Position numbers and translations under genes: made by a program. The notes below the pieces were generated by a model, which had not been told where the DNA came from, did not search any database, and saw only the letters and a list, made by a program, of their open reading frames with translations. From Mytilus californianus (taxonomy: Eukaryota): a DNA stretch of 64,000 nucleotides. Of this stretch, positions 9,465 through 64,000 are shown piece after piece. The first letter of the stretch is position 1, and each line of letters opens with the position of its first letter. The stretch covers positions 15,686,001 to 15,750,000 of the forward strand of contig NW_026262668.1 in the NCBI RefSeq assembly GCF_021869535.1, given 5' to 3'.

Positions 9465-10673
9465 ATGACAGAGGAAATCAACAAATCACATGATAAAATG
9501 AGGTTGCAAGGGAGGAAAATAGATTACTCTGTGAAAGATTCGCAATCGCAATTGCAAGAGTCGATATCTGCTGAATTGCCAAGAGAACAATTCTTATATG
9601 AAACATTGAAGAAAGCAAGAAAACAACACAGCGAAGAGAAAGAAAAGCTTAATAAAGAATCAAAACGACTTAAAGAAGTTCAGAACGAAAGAGAAAATGA
9701 CTTTGCTAAATTAGAAAAAAATTTCAGAGAGTTACGAGAAAACTATGAGATGTTACTTAGTGAAAGGAAAGAAAATAGATACAATCTGAAAGAGGAAGCT
9801 AAAGGATGTACTGTAAGTTCTGAGGGTTATGTAAATCTACTACAAAAGAGACTTCAACATAACGAGGTTGAAACTACTCGGATCCATTACCTCCTTAAGG
9901 AGAAAGAAGACATCATAACAAAATTAAGAACAGAAAAAGACGACCTTCAAACAAGGTTAAGTAGTGTTGCCGGTGAAAAACTGGTTAAAGGGAATCCGTC
10001 TATTACCGATCTTGGAGATCCAAATCGTCCAATGAAAATTGGTGAAAAATATGGAGAATTGTATGATAATGAATGGACAGATTCTATGGAATGCATAAAT
10101 GATATAAAATCCTTCTACAGCGACAGTGAACACCCAGATTTTGAGGAAATACTCGTACTCCATCTTTGTAGACTGTTAAAAATTTGTTACCACGAATGCT
10201 TAGCACTAGCAGATGAACAGATAGATAAGATTGGCAAAACACTTGCAGAAACATTGTGTCTCAATGTCAGTTCTAGAGAAGATATATGCAATTTATCTCT
10301 TTGCAAAGATGTAGCAACACAGAGACGATTAAGGCATGAGCACTTTGCGAATTATCTGTTCAAAAATCAGATTATTGGCAAAACAGCGGTGAATGCCTGG
10401 GATTATGCATACAAAAGTGCAGACGTAATTGAGCTTCTAATGAAAACACAATTTTTTGAAAAATGTATCAACCTTTGTTGGTGTATGGTGATTCAGGATC
10501 CTATAATGTATTTAGATGAAGACATAAAGCCGGGCACATCAATTGACAAGAATACATACAAGGAATTTGTTAAAAGCGGAAACAAAGTAAAATATGTTGT
10601 CTGGCCAGCATTATTTTTACACAAAGACGGACCGTTGCTTTACAAAGGAATCGTACAAGCATTCTGGCAGTAG
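9465..10673 (+). CDS. Intronless coiled-coil protein with MIEAP/SPATA18-type (mitochondria-eating protein) C-terminal domain, 402 aa
   Basis: Long ORF with an E/K-rich coiled coil, then NPSITDLGDPNRPMKIGEKYGELYDNEWTD and LCWCMVIQDP...VVWPALFLHKDGPLLYKGIV, which match the MIEAP C-terminal motifs. An in-frame TAA at 9450-9452 precedes the ATG. Confidence 0.8.
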   Translation: MTEEINKSHDKMRLQGRKIDYSVKDSQSQLQESISAELPREQFLYETLKKARKQHSEEKEKLNKESKRLKEVQNERENDFAKLEKNFRELRENYEMLLSERKENRYNLKEEAKGCTVSSEGYVNLLQKRLQHNEVETTRIHYLLKEKEDIITKLRTEKDDLQTRLSSVAGEKLVKGNPSITDLGDPNRPMKIGEKYGELYDNEWTDSMECINDIKSFYSDSEHPDFEEILVLHLCRLLKICYHECLALADEQIDKIGKTLAETLCLNVSSREDICNLSLCKDVATQRRLRHEHFANYLFKNQIIGKTAVNAWDYAYKSADVIELLMKTQFFEKCINLCWCMVIQDPIMYLDEDIKPGTSIDKNTYKEFVKSGNKVKYVVWPALFLHKDGPLLYKGIVQAFWQ

Positions 10674-10966: not shown

Positions 10967-11552
10967 AAAGGACAAGGAACGATATGGCCTGTTTTTGGCC
11001 CCCCTATTTTCTCATTTTTAAATTCTGTTTTGGAAAGCTACGTATTATGTTAAAGTATTCCCTGAGGTTTGAAGTTTGTTTGGGTGAACTTGAAAACCAC
11101 TAATTTTAGCAACTGGGTGAGATGAGGGGGGTAAACTTTCTGTTATTATTCAAATATTGTAATTATTATTCACTTTGCAGGTGTTCCGTACAACGAATTT
11201 TTAGTTTTTAAGTGCCTGCGCCAACGTGACTCAGAATTTTTTTTATTCCAATGTCATGAGAACTGTTTTTGCTGTCTAAATCGCCTTAATTTTCTCCGGG
11301 TCACGTAGGCGCACGCTATTAAATTTTAAGAAACAATGGCCAAAAATCGTAATTTTTCCTTCTTTTGGCGTTTTTGATGCCCTTTTACCCCCTCACCTCG
11401 CCCATTTTCTGAAATTAATGGTTTTGAAGTTCATCCGAACAAACTTCAAACCTAAGGGAATATTTTAACGTGAAAAGTAGCTTTCCAAAACAAAATTTGA
11501 AAAATAAGAAAATAGGGGGCCAAAAAACGGGCCTCATCGTACCTTGTCCTTT
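10967..11552. mobile_element. MITE with ~170-bp terminal inverted repeats (Kolobok-like termini possible)
   Basis: AAAGGACAAGGAACGATATGGCC... (10967-11135) is the inverse of ...GGGCCTCATCGTACCTTGTCCTTT (11383-11552). The TTAA-type TSD is degenerate. Confidence 0.75.
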
Positions 11553-12147
11553 GTCGTACTGTAATCTGTACTTGCTGTCAATATTGTATCAGATGACCAG
11601 GTATGTTATTTACAGGGAATGCCTGGTCATCTGATAAGTAATAACTTACAGGTATCTTTAAAAGGTCAATATCCATATAATGTTCAGTTTTGGGAGAAGT
11701 AGTAAACACAGAAATAAATTATTAATAAATGTCATGTTGCTGACTTGAAACCGGTACTTTTGTTTGTTAGGGAGAATCAACATTTGTAAGAAAAATCTTT
11801 ATTGTATTTTAATTCAATATTAACCTTTTATACAACATTTCTCTCATTAAAAAAAGAGGAGATGATACCAAGGGAGCAGTCAAAAACAATAAATGAAAAA
11901 AAAACACGAACAAAACCACGGCCAATAGAAACAAACGACAAAAGACGAACACAAATTCACAAAACACTATCAAAAAATCTAAAAACATGAATCCCACACC
12001 AAAAACATGGGTTGAACTCAGTTACTCCAGAAGGGTGAGTAATTCCTGCTCTTCTAGCGTCTTCTGTCATGCAGCTAGCGGTAAGTAAAGTTTCGGTGAT
12101 TGGTCGCATACAGTGATGTTATAATCGAGAGAAAGAGGACGGGATTG

Positions 12148-12480
12148 AGGTTACGGATGAAGGTAAAAATCCAGATAAAAGCACTTTGGACGCACGAAAC
12201 TTATAAACTGTTATTTTCGTTTAATAGACATAGGTCGATACCGCTGCTGGTGGACTATTAATCCCCGAGGATATAGTCAGCTCGGTAGTCAGTGCTTCGG
12301 TACTAACATAATTTACAACCAACTTTTCTTAAATTCTCATTTGATGAAATGAGAAATTTTACCGTAGAAAAGTTAGTCGTTTTTATGTATTTATACATCA
12401 TTGGCTATAAAATGTTTTAAACGTCCCTATTGAAGTTAATTCAGATAAAATCTTCGGATGCACGAAATTTATAAAGTGTT
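12148..12480 (+). mobile_element. Retrozyme-like monomer bounded by two degenerate hammerhead motifs
   Basis: Matching GGA(C/T)GCACGAAA ends at 12188 and 12466 (278 bp apart). The internal GCTGCTGGTGGAC...GTAGTCAG is homologous to the internal domain of the 23925-24640 unit. Confidence 0.55.
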
Positions 12481-13207
12481 CGTCAGTCATGCTGTAGCCT
12501 TTTATAGTTTATAATCATAGGTATTGGTTTCGCACGACCCATACTGGCTTACATCCTCGTTCTTTGGTATGTGGTGATTATTTTTTAAGGGGAAAGCTGA
12601 AAAAAATAAACATGCAATATTTTATTGAACCAAAGCAAAAAAGTGTCTAGTACATAATTTCCCGTGGAGACAATTTTCATTCAAAAGTCGTTTACTACAA
12701 ATTCCTAGGTCATGGTCTATTATTTACAATATCACAAAGGCAACCGCATTTGGAATATTAAAGAAATGTCAGAAAAAGGAAGTGGCATGATCAATGATAT
12801 GTTTACCCTTCACATGTGACACTGGCTATATACCGAAAGAAAGAAGTAGCTTATACGTCATTTTGATCAAAAACTGAAAGATACTATCTGCAAAATCACA
12901 TTCATGACATGTACCTTTCTAATATTGATATACACGTCGCCATTTCTTGCATATGCATATTTGTACTTTTGTTCCTACTCGTGACTTAAATTATCTACTA
13001 TAGATATCTCTATTTTACTTAAAATTATTTTTAGACTTTATCTCGTGACAGTCATACGATATTAATATTGCAACATTTTAAAAAAAAACTTTTTTAACTG
13101 AACGAAATGGGTTTTTAAATGTATATGTTTCCTTTTACATAAAACGGTAATAGGAATAAAACATAATATATGCACTTTCTGTTTCACCAAGAAATTTATT
13201 AATCAAA

Positions 13208-15553
13208 ATGTCGAATAATTTCGAGACTTGTAATATGTGGGGGTCTAATAATTTGATTCAGATTTGTGAGAACTGTAGGATTAAGTGCTGTGGTAAGTGC
13301 TTTGAACACCATGGTGGTAATGCATGTAAATATATCAAAGACAGTAAGTGTCATATCTGTGAAATTCACAGAGAACTACTTAATTCTTTGACCGGATATT
13401 GTTTTCAGTGTCAATATTTAATATGTGATTTATGTCGGACAATAGGAGATCATGATGATCATACAATCGTGGTATTAACGGAGGCTGTTTTTATCGTACA
13501 ATCGGAACATATACATTATACAGAGAGTGATGAAAAACGTTCAATTGAAACAACTTCTGATACAAAGAAACTCCTAGAAACTTTAACTGACCAAATAGAA
13601 AATCAGTGTAAAAAAATAATTGATTGTATCTCATTGAAGAAACATAGACTTCTATCAGAACTTAACGAACACAAACAGTCTCTAAAAGATTATGAAATAG
13701 AAAGGGAAAGAGACATACAAAGTGTCCGGGAAGTCATGTCGGAATTAAAATCGTCAAGAGCTGTATTTCCAATTATTTTTTTGCATAAATGGCAAAATTT
13801 TGCAAAACAAATGAATAAGCTTGAAAAAATTAAACCCGCTGATCGACTAACCTTTCATTGTGGATTAATAAACAAATCAAATTTAGATGAACAGTTCGGC
13901 AAGTTACAAAATGTAGATCCGCAAAAGGACGTGAATGATCAAGAAGTTGACAAGTTAGTATCTGATGAATCACTAAAGATAAATAACACAGACATGGTTT
14001 CAAGACAATATCAAGAAATTCAAACACAGAATGAATCGTTGAAAAGGGAGGCATTGAGCCTAAAATCAGAACTAGAAACATTAAAAAATGAGAGAAATTA
14101 CATGATACAACTGTCAGAGGAAACGTGCCAGTTTGTAAAAGACTACAATAGTAAACTGGAAGATTGTTGTATACATGTAAATGAAAAAAATCTGCTCAAA
14201 AGATTTGGTAGTAGTCACATGGACTCGTATGCTGATAGAATGAATTATATCATAAAACAATTCCAGATGCTAAAAGAGCATGGTATTCAAAACGAAAAGG
14301 GATTTTTGGAGCAGCTGAAAGGAATGGCTAAATTGACAAATGAATTGAATTCAGACATAAACCAAAAACAACATGAAATAAGGAAAATGAACAAGTTATT
14401 GAATGATCTACAGTCCAAGGAAAGGCGAATTTCTGAATTGGGAGTTAAAGAATCCGATGCAAGGAAAGGAGAGCAAAAGCTCTATGACACTAAAGATAAA
14501 CTACAAATAGAACACAGTAAAGAAATAGAGTCCCTTAAAATCAAGCATCAATCAGATCTGTTGAAACAAGTTCAAAACGAGAAGAATAGAAATGAAAAGG
14601 TGAATAGACAAACACAAGAAAAAATAATAAAACTACTCAAAGAAAAAGATGAGAATATCTTACAACTGAGAGGAGAAATTAAAGGCAGTCAAGCACGTTT
14701 TGATGATAACATCAATCATTTACAGCTGAAGCTGTACGAAGGCGAGACTGAAATAATGCAACTCCGGCAGGTTCAGAAAGAGACACAAGAAAATATAAAA
14801 AAACTAATAACAGAAAAAGACGAACTTCAAACTCGGCTTAGTAGTGTTGCTGGGGAGAAACTTAGCAAGGGAAATCCCACTATTACCGATCTTGGAGATC
14901 CTAATCGTCCAATGAAAATTGGTGAAAAATATGGAGAATTGTATGATAATGAATGGACAGATGCTATGGAATGCATCAATGACATAAAATCATTTTACAG
15001 CGACTGTGAACATCTAGATATAGAGGAAGTAATGGTACTTCATCTTTGTAGACTACTGAAAATGTGTTACAACGAATGTTTATCATTGGCAGATGAACAG
15101 ATAGATAAAATTGGAAAAACAATTTCAGAAACTTTGTGTCTCAATGTTAATTCTAGAAGTGATTATTACAATTTACCCGCGTGCAAAGATGTAGTCGTAC
15201 AAAGAAGACAGAAGTCTGACCACTTTGTGAATCATTTGCTTGCTAATCAGATTATCGGCAAAACAGCTGTGCATGACTGGAATTATGCTTATAAAAGTGG
15301 AGACGTAATGAAGCGTCTAATGAAAATGCAATTTTTTGAAAAATGTGTAAGTCTTTGTTGGTGTATGGTGATTCAAGATCCCGTAATGTATTTAGATGCA
15401 GACATAACGCAAGGCACAACTTTCGACAAGAATACATACAAAGAATTTGTCAAGAGCGGAAACAAAGTAAAATATATTGTTTGGCCAGCACTTTTTCTAC
15501 ACAAAGACGGGCCTTTGCTTCATAAAGGAATCGTACAAGCGTATTGGCAATAA
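13208..15553 (+). CDS. Intronless B-box1/B-box2 - coiled-coil - MIEAP-domain protein (RING-less TRIM-like), 781 aa
   Basis: N-terminal C/H clusters CENCRIKCCGKCFEHH and CEIH...YCFQCQYLICDLC..GDHDDH (B-box 2 pattern), then about 450 aa of coiled coil. The C-terminal ~240 aa are closely paralogous to 9465-10673. Confidence 0.85.
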   Translation: MSNNFETCNMWGSNNLIQICENCRIKCCGKCFEHHGGNACKYIKDSKCHICEIHRELLNSLTGYCFQCQYLICDLCRTIGDHDDHTIVVLTEAVFIVQSEHIHYTESDEKRSIETTSDTKKLLETLTDQIENQCKKIIDCISLKKHRLLSELNEHKQSLKDYEIERERDIQSVREVMSELKSSRAVFPIIFLHKWQNFAKQMNKLEKIKPADRLTFHCGLINKSNLDEQFGKLQNVDPQKDVNDQEVDKLVSDESLKINNTDMVSRQYQEIQTQNESLKREALSLKSELETLKNERNYMIQLSEETCQFVKDYNSKLEDCCIHVNEKNLLKRFGSSHMDSYADRMNYIIKQFQMLKEHGIQNEKGFLEQLKGMAKLTNELNSDINQKQHEIRKMNKLLNDLQSKERRISELGVKESDARKGEQKLYDTKDKLQIEHSKEIESLKIKHQSDLLKQVQNEKNRNEKVNRQTQEKIIKLLKEKDENILQLRGEIKGSQARFDDNINHLQLKLYEGETEIMQLRQVQKETQENIKKLITEKDELQTRLSSVAGEKLSKGNPTITDLGDPNRPMKIGEKYGELYDNEWTDAMECINDIKSFYSDCEHLDIEEVMVLHLCRLLKMCYNECLSLADEQIDKIGKTISETLCLNVNSRSDYYNLPACKDVVVQRRQKSDHFVNHLLANQIIGKTAVHDWNYAYKSGDVMKRLMKMQFFEKCVSLCWCMVIQDPVMYLDADITQGTTFDKNTYKEFVKSGNKVKYIVWPALFLHKDGPLLHKGIVQAYWQ

Positions 15554-16987
15554 TTTGATATTTGACGTGTTTTTGAATGATTGAAAGAAATTAAACGGAA
15601 TAACAAGGTATCCAAAAGTTAACTGAATAAAACACAACCGGCGAAATATACCAAAGGGATAATGAACTGCATCATTTGAATACTGATTTTCCTAATTTGG
15701 TTTTTTATATGTTGAATTATTACTTAATACATAATGACATTTTCTGTTTAAATCTCTTCAGACATAACTAATTATAAACAAAAAATGTTATATTATATAA
15801 TATCCAAAATAAAAACAACAATGATGTAAAAATAAACGCAAGAAGGTAAGGCGTTTCGTTTTATCGATGTGAATCATCCTCTGCTAGCGTGGTGTTTTGA
15901 AATATCATTCAACTTTTATATCAGGGGACTTATGAGTTATTTCTTCTATACAATACTGATAGTTTCGTTGTATTTGTGTTATATTTTGTTCTTTTGTACG
16001 CAGCGTTTTATTGAAGTTCAAAATTGGCGTCACAGATACCTTTTAAATTCCACTACTTTGTTCAGTGATATTTACTAACAAGAATAAGTAATCACAATCG
16101 TAATGAAGTAAGATATGTTTAATATGTCGATTGTCCATATACTACCCAATTTCAAGAAAAATCTGTTCAAGCGGGGTAATAATTGATAATTGTTTGTCAA
16201 ATACTGGACTCGGTACAAACATTACATGAGGTCTTACCAAAACTCCAACTTGAATGACAGTCATTTCAATTTATTTCATGTTTACCTTGAATTCAGCATT
16301 CTCCTCACTTCACTGAAATATATTGACTGGTACATCAGGCTGTATAGCGAAAGGTTGATTAAAGGTATCAAAAACTAGTTTACCCAACCATGTGGTCATG
16401 CATTTGTCCTAAGTCAAGAACCTCGTCAGTAGTTTTGCTTAATTATAACTCACGTAATGTGTTTTATCCTGCTGGGAATTTAATATTAAGGGCTTGGATA
16501 GTCTGTCATAAATTTATTCCCACATTTTCTACGCTTGGGACGATTCGGAGCTTGACATTTTGTATATTTTTAGAAATTATATAATGATTTGTAATGTTTG
16601 TTTCTGTTTTGTGTCTTTTGATTGTTGACTAGTTTGTGATAATTTTATATGTTGTTCATATAAACTACTAGTAAATCAAGGAATGTTCCCGACGTTCGTT
16701 ATTTACCCAAAATTTACTATCTACGATAATGTACATTACAAGCATAGGAACAATTTTGATAACATCTATAATTGCTTCAATCCATGATACTCTCGTTTCA
16801 TAGCAACAAGAAAAAACTCGAACCAAAATGATTCCTGCCAACGATTAGTTGAGATTATAGAAGATTGACTGACTGATTGATTGTTAGTTGCTGAACAGCA
16901 AGTGGAAAATGAATTAATAAAAGATACATTTTTAGGTAGATTCACCGAAGTAAAAGGACAAAATGAAAATAACACTTTATAAATTGT

Positions 16988-18167: not shown

Positions 18168-20012
18168 TTAAAGAATGCATTTAGCTAAGTGTAGACAAAC
18201 GTCTGCCATTTTAACAAAATATTCATTGATGCCAACGAAAAACTTTAATCGCACTGTAAGTTCTAGTTCTTGAAAAACTTTTATTTTGCCTCCGTGATTT
18301 CCTAAATGATGGAGGCAAAGAAAACGAAGAAGATGAAAATAAACAACTGCTGGTAAAAAAAGTTCTCCGTGTCGGTTTAATGATTCAAGGGGTTTCAGTT
18401 CTTCTGGTAATAAAATGAATGGTTCGAAAAAAAAAACTTCTGCGAAAAGATAATGCTTGCAAGCCAGCGTAAATCCAACTGTTTGTATTCTTCTTTGGAA
18501 CACAGTTTGTTCTTCTATTGAACTGTTGCCATGTAATCTAATCTTACCTGGCGCTAGCTTGCATAAGCAGTGGTTTACTATATACATGCCTTGTTTGAAT
18601 TGTTTTCTTTTATAAAAAAAATGAGGCAATTAATATCCAACCAGAAGCCGCGTCTGTATACAAATTTGATTTAAGATATTTCAATAAGTTATTGTCTTGT
18701 CTGTAAAATGATTTGTTTCTTCCGGACATATTTGGTAGAAAATGTTGTTGCACATATCTTTGGCAAAGTAAGGAAGTGAAGTAAAGGAAAATTTCTTTAG
18801 AAGAAAAATATGCACAAGCAAACATAGCACGCTGTAATCGTATCGGTAAGACTTGGATTGAACCATTCGATAAATGCCCTAAATAAACAAGACATTGCAC
18901 GAAAGAAACTGTTAAATAGGGTAGAATTATAGTACGTTGTACGGATCTGAACGTTTGTAAGGTGTCCGTGTGGAAACCACAAGTCCAACCTAGATTATAA
19001 GTGCGAAGTAATGTTGTCAATAAACATTTATGCTGTGAATCTTTAAACCTATAAAAAACAGGTTGTTATCAGGAATAAAATATTGAAGACAAGTCTTGTA
19101 TTTAACACAGTAAATTAGTCGACGTAAGCAGGTTATGAAACAACTAATTAAATTTTCGGGTCTCCGGTATAATGAACTAGTCTCTTCGTTCAACCAAAGC
19201 ATTATGGTTTTAATGAAATACGAGCATAGTAAATCTCCGTGTTCTTCTTTTATTATATCTTTCAAAAGAATTTTAAGCACAGCATAGCATAATAATTGCG
19301 TGTGAGAAAATGAAAAAATAATAAGATGTTTTTCTGCTACTGAAAATGATATACGCCATTCAAGATCCTCAGTTGTAGAATCCTTACTTCCAACTGGAAC
19401 AAATAAAGTTCCATATTCTACAATGGAAGTAATTAAAGCATGATAAAGATTCGAAGATCCTGATCTATAGATCCATGGGTGAGCAGCAGAAAACCATTCT
19501 TGGCAGCAAAAAGAGTATGTCCCATCAAAGATAGCATCTGAATTAGAAATGCATGGACCGTGAATTATCATATCTCCCGGTAATTCCATTTGTAAAGAAA
19601 ACTCCTTGAAAAGTTTACTTGATATGTAGTAATCACCCTCTATTAATTCGCAGCAATCTTTTACTGGGAAGCTGGTAGGTGATCCGTGTAATAACTTGAG
19701 CTTTGTAAATCCGGGTTTTACGTCAAAGGTGTCCATTACGATAGGCATTTTATTTTGAAAGTTATGAATCTCATACACATTCCCATATACTCGATAAAGT
19801 TGAATAACTGCCATCCGATCGTTATCACTACCTGCAAGGTCTAAGCCTTCTGACTTACTCCCACTACTTATATAGGTAAATTTATTGTCTTTGCTAACAA
19901 AATCCATTGCTACAAATATCTCTCTTCTTGTCCTTACCCCTTCCTTCAAACCAAAAATATTGCATAAATATTGATAGAATTTAGTTGATACTTCTCCATC
20001 TATGAGGTACAT
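18168..20012 (-). pseudogene. Mab-21/cGAS-like receptor (cGLR) nucleotidyltransferase, ~614 aa if two frameshifts are corrected (pseudogene or assembly error)
   Basis: NTase motif SGSKSEGLDLAGSDND, then HGPC and WRISFSVAEKHLI...LCSYFIKT...YFIPDNNLF (Mab-21 C-lobe). The helical C-terminus continues through ORFs 18610-19020 and 18168-18629. Frameshifts fall in A6 at 19053-19058 and A8 at 18614-18621. A splice acceptor lies just upstream of the ATG (AG at 20030-20029). Confidence 0.85.
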
Positions 20013-37200: not shown

Positions 37201-39052
37201 TGTAGACTTTCCACTTACATCAAGCAACACTTCCTCAGGTTATAAAAAAGATAGTATGGTCATTAAACTATCAAGACAATTTCATTTCTTGAATTAATAA
37301 CTTGTAACAACAAGTATGCTTTAGTTTCATTAAACTCTCGAAACAATGCTATCACTTGATTTAAAAGTTATCATCATATAATGTAACTACATTTATGCTT
37401 TTATAATTATTTTCTTTTTAGGTATTTTTATTGCCATGGCAACACTGACAATATTACAAAGTGACACCTTCGAAGACAGCCAATTGAGCTATAGTGGGTA
37501 CCTAGGACTTGTTGCAGATGTAATCGCTATTATCATAGCTCCGTTTTACATAATTGATGGTATAACAACAACAAAACAACTAGACAAACCACGTGACAAA
37601 CGTCAAAAGCGTTGGGACAGAACAGAGCCGCAACTACCACCTGTTCTATCCAGTTTAGCACCGGAAACTACATTCATTTTGGATCGTTGTCCGACCTATC
37701 ACTCGCAAATAATGGAAGTGTATAATGAACCTAGACCCTCTACATCTAAACAGTCGAAAAAGCGTTCATCTACACTTCTTAATATGATCAAAAACAAGAA
37801 CACAGCAACAATAAAAGAATCAGAAAAGAAAGAAGAAAAGGTAATGGAACAAGATTATAATAAAACGAATGAAGAAGACAGTAGAGAAACTACAGATAAA
37901 ATGCTATTATCTTATCCCGAAATGATTGCTTTGCAACCATTAACAGAAAAAAATGATTTCGAAAATAAACCAGAGGTGATGGATCAAGAAACGAAAGAAA
38001 TACGTGATACGGACATAGATATATTTGGTATTAAAGACGTTGCCCATAATGAGATATTAGACAAGAACCAGGATGAAAAACAAGAATTTTCAAATGAAAA
38101 GCACAAGACTGCAGATGTATACGAATCAGAATCAACGGGCTCCAAAAAGAAAAAGAAGAAGAAGAAGAAACAACACAAAGCAAAGAAACATGTAAAAGAA
38201 GAAACAGTTGATACGACAAATACAGAACAAATGGCGTTGTCAAAACTAACAACTCATGAAAAGGAAAAACAACCTGATTTTGAAAAATCTAAGACTATTG
38301 ATGCAACAAAGCCGAAGTTAGAAGAACTAGTATACGACAAAAGTGCTGAAGAAGGGGCTATAGGGGACGCACTATTACTTTATCCCGAAGTACCTGCTTT
38401 GCAACAGTCAGAAAACAATATTGTTCATTTTGAAAATAAGCAAAAATATAAACCTGATACGAATACAGGTATTGTGGACACCGGGATATTGGACAAAAAA
38501 CGCGAAAAACAAGAAGATTCAAAAGAAGCACATACGAATGAAGACATGGACGAGTCAACTGGCTCCAAAAAGAAAAAGAAGAAACATCATAAAAAAAAGA
38601 AAAAAGAAGAAACAACAGATCAGACAATTACAGAACAAACATATGAAAAAGAAGAAAGGACCGATGTTGAAAACCCACGGGTTGTTGAACTTATAAGCTC
38701 GAAGTTAGAAGAACAAGTATACGACAAAATTACTAAAGAACCCGACGTTAATGAAATATCCCATAGTGAAGAAATGAGAATAGAAGATAAAAGCGAAAGA
38801 AAAAATGACAAAAGTAAGAAAAAGAAAAAGAAAAAGAAAGATGAACTACCACACTTCTTCGAAGACTTTGTAGTAAGGTATAAAACAGAAGAAATGCCAG
38901 AATCAACCGAATTAAGTTTTGACCACTTATTGCAAGAGTCCGAAACTGCTACAACGACAGAAGAAACTATAAAGATTACAGAAAAGCCTATACCTCAAAG
39001 TACAATTAATCAAAGAGTCCTTTCTGGCAAATTTAGAATGAACAAGATATAA
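31292..39052 (+). CDS. Claudin/PMP22/EMP-superfamily tetraspan protein A with ~500-aa Lys/Glu-rich C-terminal tail; 3 exons, 661 aa
   Basis: Exons 31292-31490 (199 nt), 33776-33931 (156 nt) and 37422-39052, all GT-AG and phase 1. TM1 is followed by PSW...GFFLTC...C (W-GLW-C-C-like loop); four hydrophobic segments; TM4 ends PFYIID. Confidence 0.8.
33557..33598 (-). ncRNA. Degenerate hammerhead relic (family B) in gene A intron 1
   Basis: The minus strand reads GCGTAC-CTGGTGA-AGGTAAATCCA-GAAA-AGAGCT-TC-GGATGA. Confidence 0.5.
34273..34836 (+). mobile_element. Same-architecture hairpin element inserted in the 41-bp array
   Basis: IR pair CTTTTATCATGTACTT (34270) and AAGTATATGATAAAAAG (~34676); hairpin 34700-34823. 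The array resumes in register at 34837. Confidence 0.65.
35120..35557 (-). mobile_element. Same-architecture hairpin element inserted in the 41-bp array
   Basis: Hairpin 35124-35284; IR pair GTTTCTCTAAT and ATTAGAGAAAC. The array resumes immediately after it. Confidence 0.65.
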
Positions 39053-46451: not shown

Positions 46452-49233
46452 ATGGAGTGCAAGAAACGTTTACTGAGGCCTAAGAGTATCCAATTGATTG
46501 CCACATATGTCGGCTTTATTCTATACTTGGCATGTTTTGCTACACCTGCATGGATTGTGTATTCTGATGGTATCGTAAAGAGAACATCAGGCCTCTTCCA
46601 AATTTGTCTGGAAAATGGTCAGAATGACTGTAGTGCTTTGGTAGCAAAAGGTATGTGTTACTTCAGTTGCACTGATACAGTAGGATGGAACAAGGTAGTT
46701 TTTTATTTGGCTCGATTTATGCAGTGTCGTATCTGGGAATGTCAGGAAGAAGGGGACTCATAAACAGAAAAAAAAACTTATAGAGGTACTGGGAACAGAG
46801 CACGGCCTCTATTTCAAATAAGATAATATATCACTATATAATATTTTTTATACATTTGTTTATGTATTATTCAAAGCAAGGTTGTTCTGCCCGTTTCGTA
46901 ATTAATCTTTAATAATAACTGTTAATTCACTTCAATGTATCACAATTTTGTCATGGATTCAACCACTTCACGTTAAACAAACAACGATCAATCACCATAT
47001 CAATCATGGATTAAACACTATCACTGCTCATTTAAAGACTTATATAGATTCGGTAAGCTGGGTTGTTATTCAATGTGGCAGTTATTCGGCGGATATTCAA
47101 TTTTCGATTGTAAAAAGAACTGCGAGTTTTTGCTCCTTTTTGAAAGCCTCACTGTGACTTTGAGATGAAGAACAGCAATAAAAGCGCTTTTCCTTTGCTT
47201 TTTTTGTGTTTTTTGCTGAGCTGAACATGTACTGATTTTGTGTCTAGGATGGATACCCATATCCTTTCTTTTCTATCAAATGTAATTATTTTATCATTTC
47301 AGATAACATGCTTAGGACAACACAACCTTTAGGATGTCTTGGCTTAGTAGCTTACTTTTGTTTCTGTGTATCTGCTACACTTGCACATTTCGGTTCAGAC
47401 AAATGGAAGATGTTGAAAGGAATCAAATTTCTAGCCTTTATCAGTGCCTTATCAGCTGGTAAGATCTGTCTAACAACCACACTCTAACTTAAAAAACAAA
47501 ACTGCTGATTTTGTAATCATAAACAAATGAATGCGACAATCTAAAATTGAATGAAAATAATCATATTTTCTTATTAATGAAAACAGTTATTATCGCAGCA
47601 GCAGTTGTAAAAAAAACCAGCATTACTATAAAGTTTAAGAAGAAAAGGGAAGATCATTTAATAATATATATTTAATTGTACGTTTTTATCGTAAGAAAAA
47701 CCAACATTACCAAACGTTTTCTCGCTGCGTTGAAGACCCATTGGTGGCCTTCGGCTGTTATCTACTGTTTGGTCGGGTTGTTGTCGCTTTGACATATTCC
47801 CCATTTCCATTCTCAATTTTATGTTTCATTCATTTTTTTTACAGACTACATGATTAATACTAGACATATAATTTTACACTATCACTTTTTGGAGGCCTAC
47901 ACAAAAAAATATCAAAACAACATTTTAAATTCACCAAAAATCTTTATACAACTGAATTTTGTTGATGTCCTACCTCAGTCAGATCTCTTCTCTTCCTTTT
48001 GTTCCAGGAACATTTGTTGCAATAGCCCATCTCTTGATCCTTCAGAGCAAGGTAGAATACAATTCAAGCCTGGGATACAGTGGTATTATTGGAGTGATTT
48101 CTGTTTTCATAGCGCTTATTCTCTGTCCGTTTTATATATTGGATGGAATGAAAGCTAAAGGTCTGACTATCAAAAAGAAACCTTTCTCACCTAACATCCC
48201 ACCACAATCCTATCAGCACGAGGATACATTTGCCTGGTCGGACGGAATGAAAGCTAATGACCGGACTATGAAAAATAAACATTTCTCAGCTAACATTCCA
48301 CCACAATCATATCGCCACGAGGACTCGTTTGCCTGGTCGGAAACTAAATTCTGTGAACCCGTAAGACATTGTGAACCTAGCGAGCCTAGTGTCAATGAAA
48401 CTATTGAAGAAGAATCAAGTACATCGCCTAAACTTCTTCCATACAAACCAACCCCGATTCTGAAGGAACCTACATTGATTGATTTAGAACTGGATGCCGA
48501 CGATTCAATAGATGAACTAGAAAAAGACGAGGAATTGGATGATATTAACCTAAAACCTTCTCGTACTCTAGTCCCTCTTAAATCTGCAACATCTTTATAC
48601 TTTACCAATAAAGGCTTTACTCCTGACTTTGATGATGACTTTTATGAGTTACTGTCAGCAGATCCATATCGATATTTACAACCAGTTACACCACTGCCGG
48701 AAAATCTGACCGAAACACCCCAAACCCCCGTCCTGCCATATGTTCAGGAAACAGAAATGGAAGACAAAGGACTTGAGTCTCCGGATCTTACATGCCCGAC
48801 TCATGAAGCTATAACATCCGAAAATACCACTGATTGTGAAGCGCCACCTACTCCCGTTCCGCCATTCATACAGGATTGTGAATTTAAGGACGATGAACTA
48901 TGTTCATTAGGTCGTTCAGCATGTTCGACACCTATATCTGTAACATCCGATAAGCATGACCTATCAGTTTATGAAAGCGAAAATGAAGACGATTCATTAA
49001 CAACAAGCGAAGAAAACAGTGAAAAAGGGGAGACAACAAGAAATATGGACAAAAACAAGAATGATTTCAACAACGAGCAAAATCATGAAAATTCTATTTA
49101 TTTTGAAGATAAGGAGGGCGATGTTGAGGATATTACTTCAGATAAACAACCTCCGCGAAAAGCTCTGCCTGTACCAACTTTAGATTTAATACAGCTTTAT
49201 CGAGATGAAAATTCAGATACAGAAGATTTTTAA
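46452..49233 (+). CDS. Claudin/PMP22-like tetraspan protein B with ~360-aa acidic/Pro-rich tail; 3 exons, 526 aa
   Basis: Exons 46452-46650 (199 nt), 47303-47458 (156 nt) and 48008-49233. Exon 1 and 2 sizes and phases are identical to gene A. Loop PAW...SGLFQIC...C; TM4 ends PFYILD. Confidence 0.82.
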
Positions 49234-59737: not shown

Positions 59738-62700
59738 AAATAAAGAGTTGTGGTATGATTGCCAATTAGACAACTATCCACCAGAGAGGTATGATATAGA
59801 AATAAAGGAGATGTGGTATGATTGCCAATGAGACAACTATCCATCAGAGAGGTATGATATAGAAATAAGGAGATGTGGTAAGATATAGAAATAAGGAGAT
59901 GTGGTATGGTGTAGAAATAAGGAGATGTGGTATGATGTAGAAATAAGGAGATGTGGTAAGATATAGAAATAAGGAGATGTGGTATGGTGTAGAAATAAGG
60001 AGATGTGGTATGATGTAGAAATAAGGAGATGTGGTATGATGTAGAAATAAGGAGATGTGGTATGATGTAGAAATAAGGAGATGTGGTATGATGTAGAAAT
60101 AAGAAGATGTGGTATGGTGTAGAAATAAGGAGATGTGGTATGATGTAAAAATAAGGAGATGTGGTATGATGTAGAAATAAGGAGAGGTGGTATGATGTAG
60201 AAATAAAGAGATGTGGTATGGTGTAGAAATAAGGAGATGTGGTATGATGTAGAAATAAGCAGATGTGGTATGGTGTAGAAATAAGGAGATGTGGTATGAT
60301 GTAGAAATAAGGAGATGTGGTATGATGTAGAAATAAGGAGATGTGGTATGATGTAGAATTAAGGAGATGTGGTATGATGTAGGAATAAGGAGATGTGGTA
60401 TGTTATAGAAATAAGGAGTTGTGGTATGATTGCCAATGATACAAGTATCCATCACAGAGGTATGATATAGAAATAAAGAGATGTGGTATGATTGCCAATG
60501 AGACAACTATCCACCAGAGAGGTATGATATAGAAATAAGGAGATGTGGTATGATTGCCAATGAGACAACTATCCACCAGAGAGGTATGATATAGAAATAA
60601 GGAGATGTGGTAAGATATAGAAATAAGGAGATGTGGTATGATGTAGAAATAAGGAGTTGTGGTATGATTGCCAATGATACAAGTATCCATCAGAGAGGTA
60701 TGATATAGAAATAAGGAGATGTGGTAAGATTACTAATGAGACAACTATCCATCAGAGAGGTATGATATAGAAATAAGGAGATGTGGTATGATTTCCAATG
60801 AGACAACTATCCATCAGAGAGGTATGATATAGAAATAAGGAGATGTGGTATGCATGATTGCTAATGAAACAACTATCCACCAGAGAGGTATGATATAGAA
60901 ATAAGAAGATGCGGTAAGATATAGAAATTAGGAGATGTGGTATGATATAGAAATAAGGAGATGTGGTTTGATTGCCAATGAGACATCTATCCAACAGAGA
61001 GGTATGCTATAGAAATAAGGAATTGTGGTATGATTGCCAATTAGACAACTATCCAGCAGAGAGGTAAAACATAGAAATAAGAAGATGTGGTATGATTGCC
61101 AATGAGACAACTATCCATCAGAGAGGTATGATATAGAAATAAGGAGAAGTTGTATGATTGCCAATGAGAAACTATCCATCAGAGAGGTATGATATAGAAA
61201 TAAAGAGTTGTGGTATGATTGCCAATTAGACAACTATCCACCAGAAAGGTATGATATAGAAATAAGGAGATGTGGTATGATTGCCATTGAGACAGCTATC
61301 CATCAGAGAGGTATGATATAGAAATAAGGAGATGTTGTATGATTGCCATTGAGACAGCTATCCATCAGAGAGGTATGATATAGAAATAAGGAGATGTGGT
61401 ATGATTGCCAATGAGACAACTATCCATCAGAGAGGTATGATATAGAAATAGGAGATGTGGTATGATTGCCAATGAGACAACTATCCAACAGAGAGGTAAG
61501 ATATAGAAATAAGGAGATGTGGTGAGATACAGAAATAAGGAGATGTGATATGATGTAGAAATAAGGAGTTGTGGTATGATTGCCAATGATACAAGTATCC
61601 ACCAGAGAGGTATGATATAGAAATAAGGAGATGTGGTATGATTGCCAATGAGACAACTATCCACCAGAGAGGTATGATATAGAAATAAGGAGATGTGGTA
61701 TGATTTCCAATGAGACAACTATCCATCAGAGAGGTATGATATAGAAATAAGGAGATGTGGTATGATTTCCAATGAGACAACTATCCATCAGAGAGGTATG
61801 ATATAGAAATAAGGAGATGTTGTATGCATGATTTGTAATGAAACAACTATCCACCAGAGAGGTATGATATAGAAATAAAGAGTTGTGGTATGATTGCCAA
61901 TAAGACAACTATCCACCAGAGAGGTATGATATAGAAATAAGGAGATGTGGTATGATTGCCTATGAGACAACTATCCACCAGAGAGGTAAAACATAGAAAT
62001 AGGAGATGTGGTATGATTGCCAATGAGACAACTATCCAACAGAGAAGTAAGATATAGAAATAAGGAGATGTGGTAAGATATAGAAATAAGGAGATGTGGT
62101 ATGATGTAGAAATAAGGAGTTGTGGTATGATTGCCAATGATACAAGGATCCATCAGAGAGGTATGATATAGAAATAAGGAGATGTGGTATGATTGCTAAT
62201 GAGACAACTATCCATCAGAGAGGTATGATATAGAAATAAGGAGATGTGGTATGATTTCCAATGAGACAACTATCCATCAGAGAGGTATGATATAGAAATA
62301 AGGAGATGTGGTATGCATGATTGCTAATGAAACAACTATCCACCAGAGAGGTATGATATAGAAATAAGAAGATGCGGTAAGATATAGAAATTAGGAGAAG
62401 TGGTATGATATAGAAATAAGGAGATGTGGTATGATTGCCAATGAGACATCTATCCAACGGAGGTATGATATAGAAATAAGGAGTTGTGGTATGATTGCCA
62501 ATTAGACAACTATCCAGCAGAGAGGTAAGACATAGAAATAAGGAGATGTGGTATGATTGCCAATGAGACAACTATCCATCAGAGAGGTATGATATAGAAA
62601 TAGGAGATGTGGCATGATTGCCAATGAGACAACTATCCAACAGAGAGGTAAGATATAGAAATAAGGAGATGTGGTACGATATAGAAATTAGGAGATGTGG

Positions 62701-64000
62701 TATGATATAGAAATAAGGAGATGTGGTATGATTGCCAATGAGACAACTATCCAGCAGAGAAGTAAGATATAGAAATAAGGAGATGTGGTATGATTGCCAA
62801 TGAGACAACTATCCACCAGAGAGGTATGATAGAGAAATAAGGAGAAGTGATATGATTGCCAATGAGAAACTATCCATCAGAGAGGTATGATATAGAAATA
62901 AGAAGATGTGGTATGATTGCTAATGAGACAACTATCCACCAGAGAGGTATGATATAGAAATAAGAAGATGTGGTATGATTGCTAATAAGACAACTATCCA
63001 CCAGAGAGGTATGATATAGAAAAAAGGAGATGTGGTATGATTGCCAATGAGAAACTATCCAACAGAGAGGTATGATATAGAAATAAGGAGATGTGATATG
63101 ATTGCCAATGAGACAACTATCCAACAGAGAGGTAAGATATAGAAATAAGGAGATGTGGTATGATTGCCAATGAGACAACTATCCAACAGAGAGGTAAGAT
63201 ATAGAAATAAGGAGATGTGGTAAGATGTAGAAATAAGGAGATGTGGTATGATTGCTAATAAGACAACTATCCACCAGAGAGGTATGATATAGAAAAAAGG
63301 AGATGTGGTATGATTGCCAATGAGAAACTATCCAACAGAGAGGTATGATATAGAAATAAGGAGATGTGATATGATTGCCAATGAGACAACTATCCAACAG
63401 AGAGGTAAGATATAGAAATAAGGAGATGTGGTATGATTGCCAATGAGACAACTATCCAACAGAGAGGTAAGATATAGAAATAAGGAGATGTGGTAAGATG
63501 TAGAAATAAGGAGATGTGGTATGATATAGAAATAAGGAGATGTGGTATGATATAGAAATAAGGAGATGTGGTATGATTGCCTATGAGAAACTATCCATCA
63601 GAGAGATATAATATAGAAATAAGGAGATGTGGTATGATTGCCAATTAGACAACTATCCATCAGAGAGGTATGATATAGAAATAAGGAGATGTGGTTTGAT
63701 TGCCAATGAGACATCTATCCAACAGAGAGGTATGATATAGAAATAAGGAGTTGTGGTATGATTGCCAATTAGACAACTATCCAGCAGAGAGGTAAAACAT
63801 AGAAATAAGGAGATGTGGTATGATTGCCAATGAGACAACTATCCATCAGAGAGGTATGATATAGAAATAAGGAGAAGTGGTATGATTGCCAATGAGAAAC
63901 TATCCATCAGAGAGGTATGATATAGAAATAAAGAGTTGTGGCATGATTGCCAATTAGACAACTATCCACCAGAGAGGTATGATATAGAAATAAGGAGATG
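59738..64000. repeat. Satellite array of 26-bp and 62-bp monomers with higher-order structure; continues beyond the window
   Basis: 26-mer RTAGAAATAAGGAGATGTGGTATGAT; the 62-mer is the 26-mer plus TGCCAATGAGACAACTATCCAYCAGAGAGGTATGAT. Confidence 0.95.

What the first reader, a model, noticed from the sequence alone, without database searches (positions are those of the whole stretch)
13208..15553. B-box/B-box/coiled-coil fused to a MIEAP domain: a TRIM-like scaffold with an unexpected C-terminal domain
The sequence shows a RING-less TRIM-type N-terminus joined in one uninterrupted ORF to a mitochondria-eating-protein C-terminal domain. Established TRIM C-terminal domains (PRY-SPRY, NHL, filamin, COS-FN3, PHD-bromo, MATH, ARF) do not include MIEAP, and I do not recall this architecture being described. 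Mammalian MIEAP/SPATA18 acts in mitochondrial quality control. Inference: an oligomerising immune or stress scaffold targeting mitochondria, and the best candidate here for an undescribed protein class.
Basis: partly seen in the sequence, partly recalled or inferred. Interest (0 to 1): 0.72.

Follow-up and report, generated by a model that had tools for sequence, protein, structure and literature searches.

The report
Mussel B-box/coiled-coil/MIEAP fusion protein
This is a real, transcribed, intronless mussel gene that joins a RING-less TRIM-like front end to a Mieap-type C-terminal domain; it belongs to a Mytilus-only branch of the published bivalve Mieap expansion, so it is a new variant rather than a new protein class.

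Summary
Window 13208-15553 (+) is one uninterrupted 781-aa ORF with two B-box zinc fingers, a long coiled coil and a C-terminal MIEAP domain (Pfam PF16026, 71.3 bits against a cut-off of 27). The B-box scores 26.2 bits against 24.1. Transcript-like contigs tile 13151-15837, and a related 2.7-kb contig aligns collinearly, so the parts are joined in one unspliced mRNA. No RING can be added upstream, because an in-frame stop lies inside the transcribed leader.

The N-terminus folds like solved TRIM72, KAP1 and TRIM5alpha B-box/coiled-coil units. It passes a homodimer test with antiparallel contacts (0.62 against a best control of 0.00).

The "undescribed class" reading is overstated. At least 20 proteins from five Mytilus species carry the same architecture, and databases auto-annotate them with both domains. 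The bivalve Mieap expansion is published (PMC8382680). All B-box-bearing members fall in one Mytilus-only clade, and ten non-Mytilus bivalve relatives lack the B-box. I found no paper that discusses the fusion.

An immune or mitochondrial role is untested. Most likely this is a self-assembling, ligase-less scaffold that presents paired MIEAP domains.

The assembled allele has Trp where all 18 aligned relatives have a zinc-binding Cys at residue 11. Other individuals of the species read Cys there.

The parts
13061..13207 (+). 5' untranslated leader, with an in-frame TAA at 13157-13159
   Evidence: The related transcript contig L001 aligns collinearly from 13061. The X1 contig starts at 13151. 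The stop codon was read from the sequence.
13208..15553 (+). Complete single-exon coding sequence, 781 aa plus stop
   Evidence: The contigs show no intron. dN/dS against L001 is 0.43 overall.
13229..13327 (+). First B-box-type zinc finger (aa 8-40). The assembled allele has Trp at ligand position 11 (13238-13240).
   Evidence: Ligand columns are conserved in 19 N-termini, with only this sequence deviating at C11. Position 13240 reads C in the X1 contig and in 2 of 2 X21 RNA reads. L001 has TGC.
13349..13474 (+). Second B-box (B-box2 type, aa 48-89): C51, H54, C65, C68, C73, C76, H82, H85
   Evidence: Pfam PF00643 scores 26.2 bits against a cut-off of 24.1. The ligand columns are invariant. 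Foldseek finds TRIM B-box2 domains.
13475..13822 (+). TRIM-like coiled coil: long helix aa 90-182 and return helix aa 188-205 carrying a conserved FP..FL..W motif
   Evidence: AF2 model. Foldseek to TRIM72 and KAP1 at E 1.9e-4, probability 1.00. Antiparallel homodimer contacts centre on aa 138-141.
13928..14827 (+). Second, proline-free coiled-coil region (aa 241-540), the fastest-evolving part
   Evidence: Heptad periodicity. dN/dS 0.54. The X2 2,081-nt contig runs from here through the MIEAP domain.
14828..15550 (+). Conserved linker motif plus MIEAP domain (aa 541-781; Pfam match aa 568-777 = 14909-15538)
   Evidence: Pfam 71.3 bits. AF2 pLDDT 86.3, pTM 0.83: a helical bundle plus a small C-terminal beta domain. 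dN/dS 0.19.
15554..15837 (+). 3' untranslated region with AATAAA signals near 15617, 15810 and 15832
   Evidence: The X2 contig ends at 15837 and L001 aligns to 15763. Sequence read.
9465..10673 (+). Tandem paralogue (402 aa) with coiled coil + MIEAP only, collinear with aa 376-781 of the target
   Evidence: Pfam MIEAP 64.5 bits. It is 61% identical overall and about 80% in the MIEAP region. It matches the transcript-derived P0056 at 384 of 402 residues. Its lineage is sister to the target's in the tree.

Best explanation
This is an expressed, intronless Mytilus gene for a RING-less TRIM-like scaffold that carries a Mieap-type C-terminal domain. It is one member of a Mytilus-specific clade within the known bivalve Mieap expansion.

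Proposed mechanism:
- The long helix at aa 90-182 pairs antiparallel with a second copy, as in TRIM proteins. This puts the B-box pairs at the two ends of a rod.
- The B-boxes provide further self-association.
- The second coiled coil (aa 241-540) holds out two MIEAP domains.
- The MIEAP domain is the constrained, target-binding part. In mammalian Mieap the equivalent region drives partitioning into cardiolipin-containing mitochondrial condensates.
- With no RING, the protein has no ligase activity of its own and would act as an assembling adaptor.

Shown here: the architecture, the transcript continuity, purifying selection that is strongest on the MIEAP domain, the TRIM-like fold and family membership. 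Inferred: dimer geometry (in silico only), higher-order assembly and the target (mitochondrial lipid or protein).
For: ORF and domains. Zinc ligands conserved across 19 paralogues. N-terminal model matches TRIM72, KAP1 and TRIM5alpha B-box/coiled-coil structures (E 1.9e-4, probability 1.00). Homodimer test: score 0.62 against best control 0.00, runs agree in at least 83% of contacts, partner pLDDT 72, antiparallel contacts 130-148, 134-145, 138-138, 141-141. That mark was reached by 21 of 30 proteins solved as pairs of one chain and 0 of 23 solved as single chains (microbes), and on eukaryotes by 17 of 29 pairs. Heptads. Transcript contigs tile 13151-15837, flanks are silent, and stranded reads lie in one orientation. 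Collinear 2.7-kb contig and dN/dS (0.43 whole, 0.19 MIEAP). Family. Role of the C-terminal region in mammalian Mieap: PMC10845071. Published bivalve expansion: PMC8382680.
Against: There is no direct evidence on localisation, partners or function. The gene sits on a long-branch, Mytilus-only clade (stem 0.67 changes per column), so the mammalian function may not transfer. Folded N-terminal zinc fingers argue against import into mitochondria, which is where mammalian Mieap condensates lie. The dimer pass may reflect the model's memory of solved TRIM dimers (caveat). Raw RNA support is thin: 51 reads laid, many of them partial matches from paralogues, and the X1/X2 runs are only guessed to be RNA. 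The assembled allele lacks one zinc ligand in the first B-box.
Confidence: 0.7

Rival explanations
1. It is an innate-immune or stress sensor of the expanded, fast-evolving TRIM-like type. The variable B-box/coiled-coil part and the MIEAP domain would recognise damaged mitochondria or intracellular pathogens and build a signalling or restriction lattice.
For: The family is large and lineage-specific, with frequent gain and loss of the N-terminus. The B-box and coiled-coil parts evolve faster (dN/dS 0.52-0.54) than MIEAP (0.19). A Mab-21 (cGAS-like) ORF lies 3.5 kb downstream. Expanded bivalve B-box families are linked to immunity in PMC8382680.
Against: No expression-after-challenge data were examined. 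No dN/dS value exceeds 1. There is no RING and no known signalling domain. Neighbourhood alone is weak evidence in a eukaryote.
Confidence: 0.15
2. It is a housekeeping or structural factor of mitochondria-rich ciliated or germ-line tissues, a Mieap paralogue tied to gill cilia or sperm. The B-boxes would serve only as an oligomerisation add-on.
For: Pfam MIEAP proteins are significantly over-represented among gill-specific transcripts of the mussel Mytilisepta virgata (PMC5549309). Mammalian Mieap has the same coiled coil + C-terminal domain plan. Many clade members work without B-boxes, including the expressed neighbour.
Against: Tissue expression of this particular gene was not measured. 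Depth in the one raw RNA run is low.
Confidence: 0.12
3. It is a decaying retrocopy or assembly artefact with no function of its own.
For: It is intronless, while most of the genome's MIEAP copies are split by introns. The assembled allele carries a substitution at a zinc ligand, C11W. Measured expression is low.
Against: The 781-codon frame is intact. dN/dS is 0.43 overall and 0.19 in MIEAP. Contigs from several runs cover the whole gene. Other individuals carry Cys11. Full-length relatives at 72-78% identity exist in M. galloprovincialis.
Confidence: 0.03

Closest known systems
Mieap / SPATA18 (mitochondria-eating protein), Pfam PF16026
   Same: It has a C-terminal MIEAP domain above the curated cut-off, preceded by coiled coil. 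That matches mammalian Mieap, whose C-terminal structured hydrophobic half drives partitioning into cardiolipin-containing condensates (PMC10845071).
   Different: It has two N-terminal B-box zinc fingers and a TRIM-like antiparallel coiled coil. It belongs to a long-branch, Mytilus-only paralogue clade rather than being the orthologue. A better-scoring, intron-split MIEAP locus lies elsewhere in the genome (C99, 101 bits for half the domain).
RING-less TRIM-like proteins (such as TRIM14, TRIM16, TRIM29, TRIM44, TRIM66; named from general knowledge) and solved TRIM72, KAP1/TRIM28 and TRIM5alpha B-box/coiled-coil units
   Same: It has tandem B-boxes followed by a helix of about 90 residues and a return helix. 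Foldseek matches TRIM72 and KAP1 at E 1.9e-4. The predicted dimer is antiparallel.
   Different: It has no RING. Its C-terminal domain is MIEAP rather than PRY-SPRY, NHL, filamin, COS-FN3, PHD-bromo, MATH or ARF. A further coiled coil of about 300 residues lies between the TRIM-like unit and the C-terminal domain.
Bivalve Mieap gene-family expansion (orthogroup OG24 of Regan et al. 2021, PMC8382680)
   Same: This gene and its neighbour are members of that expansion. This genome has at least 87 PF16026 matches.
   Different: That paper counts the family by domain and does not discuss architecture. The B-box fusion forms one Mytilus-only clade within it.
Plant GIL1/IRKI C-terminal domain (PF24994, DUF641) and GrpE
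   Same: Predicted-structure likeness of the MIEAP domain. TM by query is 0.61-0.63 to GIL1_IRKI_C clusters, using both the Atlas's own model and mine. GrpE takes the top three rows in the Foldseek-independent PDB search (Z 7.3, 7.1, 6.7; rmsd 4.3-6.3; 113-125 residues aligned).
   Different: There is no sequence-level match. The GrpE scores are in the range the tool calls possibly just a common arrangement, and Foldseek E is 0.3 or worse. These are leads only, not membership.

Membership tests
TRIM / RBCC family | N-terminal RING finger | tested here: not met
   No RING in Pfam and no RING-like motif. An in-frame TAA at 13157 lies inside the transcribed leader.
TRIM / RBCC family | B-box2 zinc finger | tested here: met
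   PF00643 scores 26.2 bits against 24.1. The eight ligand columns are conserved. Foldseek finds B-box2 structures.
TRIM / RBCC family | B-box1 preceding B-box2 (optional in TRIMs) | tested here: inconclusive
   Ligands are conserved family-wide, and there is a weak phmmer match spanning both MID1 B-boxes (2jun, aa 8-92, E 0.017). There is no Pfam call, and this allele has Trp at ligand 2.
TRIM / RBCC family | Antiparallel coiled-coil homodimer directly after the B-box | tested here: met
   In silico only. The model has helix 90-182 plus a return helix. The homodimer score is 0.62 against best control 0.00 with antiparallel contacts. The pass may reflect memory of solved TRIMs.
Mieap / SPATA18 family (PF16026) | C-terminal MIEAP domain above the Pfam gathering score | tested here: met
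   71.3 bits against 27, covering profile positions 2-194 of 195.
Mieap / SPATA18 family (PF16026) | Coiled-coil region N-terminal to the domain | tested here: met
   Heptad analysis. The mammalian layout is given in PMC10845071.
Mieap / SPATA18 family (PF16026) | One-to-one orthology with vertebrate SPATA18 | tested here: inconclusive
   The gene lies in a Mytilus-only clade on a long stem, and a higher-scoring intron-split locus exists on C99. No vertebrate sequence was in the tree.
Mieap / SPATA18 family (PF16026) | Mitochondrial localisation, cardiolipin partitioning, p53 inducibility | not testable with these tools
   Needs cell biology.

The most novel reading that the evidence does not exclude
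The Mytilus B-box/coiled-coil/MIEAP clade may be a true new TRIM-like subfamily. In this reading the MIEAP domain is the target-recognition module of a self-assembling lattice on damaged mitochondria or intracellular invaders. That domain has a pan-eukaryotic fold shared with plant GIL1/IRKI_C and a GrpE-like layout. The family's expansion alongside HSP70 in bivalves would then reflect a lineage-specific organelle or immune surveillance system.
Probability: 0.12. Interest if true: 0.65.

Novelty: new variant of a known kind. Interest (0 to 1): 0.36.

Why it matters
Bivalves have expanded Mieap genes about 90-fold over other animals (53.1 against 0.6 per species, PMC8382680), and nobody knows why. 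This work shows that one Mytilus branch fused the domain to a TRIM-like self-assembly module, and that the MIEAP domain is the constrained part. That gives a concrete handle: a dimerising scaffold whose cargo domain can be tested for lipid or protein binding. It also adds a C-terminal domain type to the catalogue of B-box/coiled-coil proteins. The value is modest, because the proteins are already in public databases with both domains marked and no function is shown.

Tried and rejected
- **Whole-protein word search:** it found only five close relatives, because coiled-coil words swamped the candidate list. Searching the MIEAP region alone and a profile of shorter members worked better, but both still returned only bivalves. 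Absence outside Mytilus is therefore not proven.
- **Foldseek of the MIEAP model against PDB:** nothing at E <= 0.001.
- **Atlas search of the whole protein among named clusters:** no cluster combined B-box and MIEAP. Only clusters of 50 or more members are searched, so this is uninformative.
- **tblastn of the protein against the window:** no B-box remnant beside the neighbour gene.
- **Upstream RING exon:** rejected.
- **Pseudogene or artefact:** rejected.
- **Earlier scan notes near the locus:** they held only this same finding and two unrelated ones.

Full report
**Observation.** Window 13208..15553 (+) is a single 781-aa ORF starting at ATG. Pfam finds the MIEAP domain PF16026 at aa 568-777 (E 1.4e-19, 71.3 bits, cut-off 27). 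It finds zf-B_box PF00643 at aa 47-89 (26.2 bits, cut-off 24.1). phmmer against PDB sequences gives only weak B-box matches, to MID1, MID2, TRIM54 and TRIM72. The window has about 32% G+C, and its closest relatives are Mytilus proteins, so the source is a mussel genome of 1.65 Gb.

**N-terminus.** I aligned 19 family N-termini. Two full sets of zinc ligands are conserved:
- First finger: C8, C11, C20, C23, C28, C31, H35.
- Second finger: C51, H54, C65, C68, C73, C76, H82, H85.

The second set is a canonical B-box2 pattern. The AF2 model of aa 1-250 (pLDDT 73.4) shows two small zinc-finger-like modules, a 93-residue helix (aa 90-182) and a return helix (aa 188-205). Foldseek places it with solved TRIM72 and KAP1/TRIM28 tripartite motifs (E 1.9e-4, probability 1.00), and with TRIM5alpha B-box/coiled-coil and isolated B-box structures.

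A two-copy complex prediction passed its controls. The score was 0.62 against a best control of 0.00. The runs agreed in at least 83% of contacts, and the partner pLDDT was 72. That mark was reached by 21 of 30 proteins solved as pairs of one chain and by 0 of 23 solved as single chains. On eukaryotes it was reached by 17 of 29 pairs. The contacts are antiparallel around aa 138-141, which is the TRIM geometry. The tool warns that a pass for a family with solved complexes may come from memory, so this shows likeness, not binding.

There is no RING. No motif or Pfam hit was found. An in-frame TAA at 13157-13159 lies inside the transcribed leader.

**Middle.** Heptad periodicity in aa 100-560 is far above shuffles: 119 windows against 17 +/- 11, maximum 58. 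Residues 241-540 contain no proline.

**C-terminus.** The AF2 model of aa 540-781, built with a 23-sequence alignment, is confident (pLDDT 86.3, pTM 0.83). It is a helical bundle followed by a small beta domain. Foldseek finds no solved relative at E <= 0.001. The Foldseek-independent search puts three GrpE representatives on top (Z 7.3, 7.1, 6.7; rmsd 4.3-6.3; 113-125 residues aligned). The tool says that range may mean only a common arrangement. Against predicted structures, both the Atlas's own model and mine match plant GIL1/IRKI_C (PF24994/DUF641) clusters and unnamed fungal and ciliate clusters, at TM 0.57-0.64 by query. The held literature links none of these to Mieap.

**Gene model and expression.** Contigs from two small runs tile 13151-15837 and are absent from 11576-13127. 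One 2,081-nt contig runs from aa 184 through the stop into the 3' UTR. A stranded raw RNA-seq run gives a few reads, all in one orientation, confined to the gene. Many reads at 14935-14971 only partly fit and come from paralogues sharing the conserved motif.

The 2,713-nt contig that encodes the closest relative (P0002, 78% identity) aligns to 13061-15763 in one collinear piece at 86.7% identity. The mRNA is therefore unspliced, and it joins all the domains. Caveats: the small runs are only guessed to be RNA, and raw-read depth is low.

dN/dS against that relative varies by region:

| Region | dN/dS |
|---|---|
| Whole protein | 0.43 |
| B-boxes | 0.52 |
| First coiled coil | 0.39 |
| Middle coiled coil | 0.54 |
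| MIEAP domain | 0.19 |

The gene is under purifying selection, and the MIEAP domain is the most constrained part.

**Family.** The genome holds at least 87 PF16026 matches. Most are on contig C165 as intron-split last exons. This gene, its neighbour and four copies on C24 each carry the whole domain in one exon. Only three other loci resemble this N-terminus (28-32% identity, C165 at 38.71-38.95 Mb). Each lies upstream of MIEAP last-exon matches, which suggests multi-exon B-box/MIEAP genes.

Searches with the MIEAP region and with a family profile returned dozens of Mytilus proteins, from M. galloprovincialis, M. edulis, M. coruscus, M. trossulus and M. californianus. Many carry PF00643 + PF16026 and automatic names such as "B box-type domain-containing protein", "tripartite motif-containing protein 66" or "transcription intermediary factor 1-alpha-like". 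Ten relatives from Ruditapes, Pinctada, Mercenaria, Potamilus, Magallana, Mizuhopecten, Pecten and an unnamed transcriptome have MIEAP only.

In a maximum-likelihood tree of 57 MIEAP domains, all 20 B-box-bearing rows fall in one clade (support 100/99, stem 0.67). That clade holds only Mytilus sequences and unnamed transcripts. B-box presence needs at least 11-12 changes inside it. The simplest reading is one fusion at the clade's base, followed by repeated N-terminal loss, truncated duplicates or partial gene models. Rows with less than 200 aligned domain residues were left out, the sample is biased towards relatives of the query, and the root is at the midpoint only.

The upstream neighbour (9465-10673) is such a B-box-less member. 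It is collinear with aa 376-781 (61% identity). It matches a transcript-derived protein at 384 of 402 residues. Its lineage is sister to the target's.

**Comparison with what is known.** Regan et al. 2021 (PMC8382680) already report the bivalve Mieap expansion: orthogroup OG24, 807 genes, 53.1 per bivalve against 0.6 in other taxa. They do not describe architectures. Gerdol et al. 2017 (PMC5549309) list the MIEAP domain among Pfam domains enriched in gill-specific transcripts of a mussel. Ikari et al. 2024 (PMC10845071) show that mammalian Mieap is coiled coil plus a structured hydrophobic C-terminal half, and that this half determines partitioning into cardiolipin-containing mitochondrial condensates. 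The mussel protein is therefore Mieap-like with a TRIM-like front end. Equivalently, it is a RING-less TRIM-like protein with a new C-terminal domain type. I found no paper that discusses the fusion.

**Mechanism (inferred).** The protein would form an antiparallel dimer through aa 90-182, with B-box-mediated higher-order contacts. The paired MIEAP domains, held on long coiled-coil arms, would act as the binding modules. There is no intrinsic ubiquitin-ligase activity. The folded N-terminal zinc fingers make import into mitochondria unlikely, so any mitochondrial role would probably be at the outer surface. That step is inference.

**Verdict.** The feature is real and tidy, but it is a lineage-specific variant within a known expansion. 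It is already present in databases with both domains marked, and no functional evidence exists.

Noticed in passing
window 13238-13240: The assembled allele has TGG (Trp) at residue 11, the second zinc ligand of the first B-box. All 18 aligned relatives have Cys there. A contig of run X1 and 2 of 2 RNA reads of X21 read TGC (Cys). This is a polymorphism or an assembly error that would weaken the first finger.
   Followed up: yes
window 19017-20012 (-): A 331-aa ORF has a Mab-21 HhH/H2TH-like C-terminal domain (PF20266, 50.3 bits). This is a cGAS-like/Mab-21 family gene 3.5 kb downstream on the opposite strand. The nucleotidyltransferase part was not looked for.
   Followed up: no
window 14828-15550 (MIEAP domain model): The MIEAP domain's predicted fold matches plant GIL1/IRKI C-terminal domain clusters (PF24994/DUF641) and unnamed Mucoromycota and ciliate clusters at TM 0.57-0.64. 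It matches GrpE weakly (Z about 7). This suggests a pan-eukaryotic fold that the held literature does not link to Mieap.
   Followed up: partly
own genome: C165 (about 24-48 Mb), C24:31.04-31.10 Mb, C99:109.77 Mb: Most of the at least 87 MIEAP matches cluster on one contig (C165) as intron-split last exons. A small cluster on C24 and the pair in this window are intronless. The best-scoring locus (C99, 101 bits for half the domain) may be the canonical Mieap orthologue.
   Followed up: partly
window 37436-39052 (+) and 47959-49233 (+): Two long ORFs (538 and 424 aa) have no Pfam match and no similarity to the target protein. They were not examined further.
   Followed up: no
window 60001-64000: GC skew is very strong (0.45-0.52) with positive AT skew over the last 4 kb. 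This suggests a strand-biased repeat or satellite.
   Followed up: no
window 10994-11575: Contig depth is very high in the probable DNA run X18 (thousands, against about 13-40 on the gene), with many loose ends. This is a high-copy repeat, probably a transposable element, between the two MIEAP genes.
   Followed up: no
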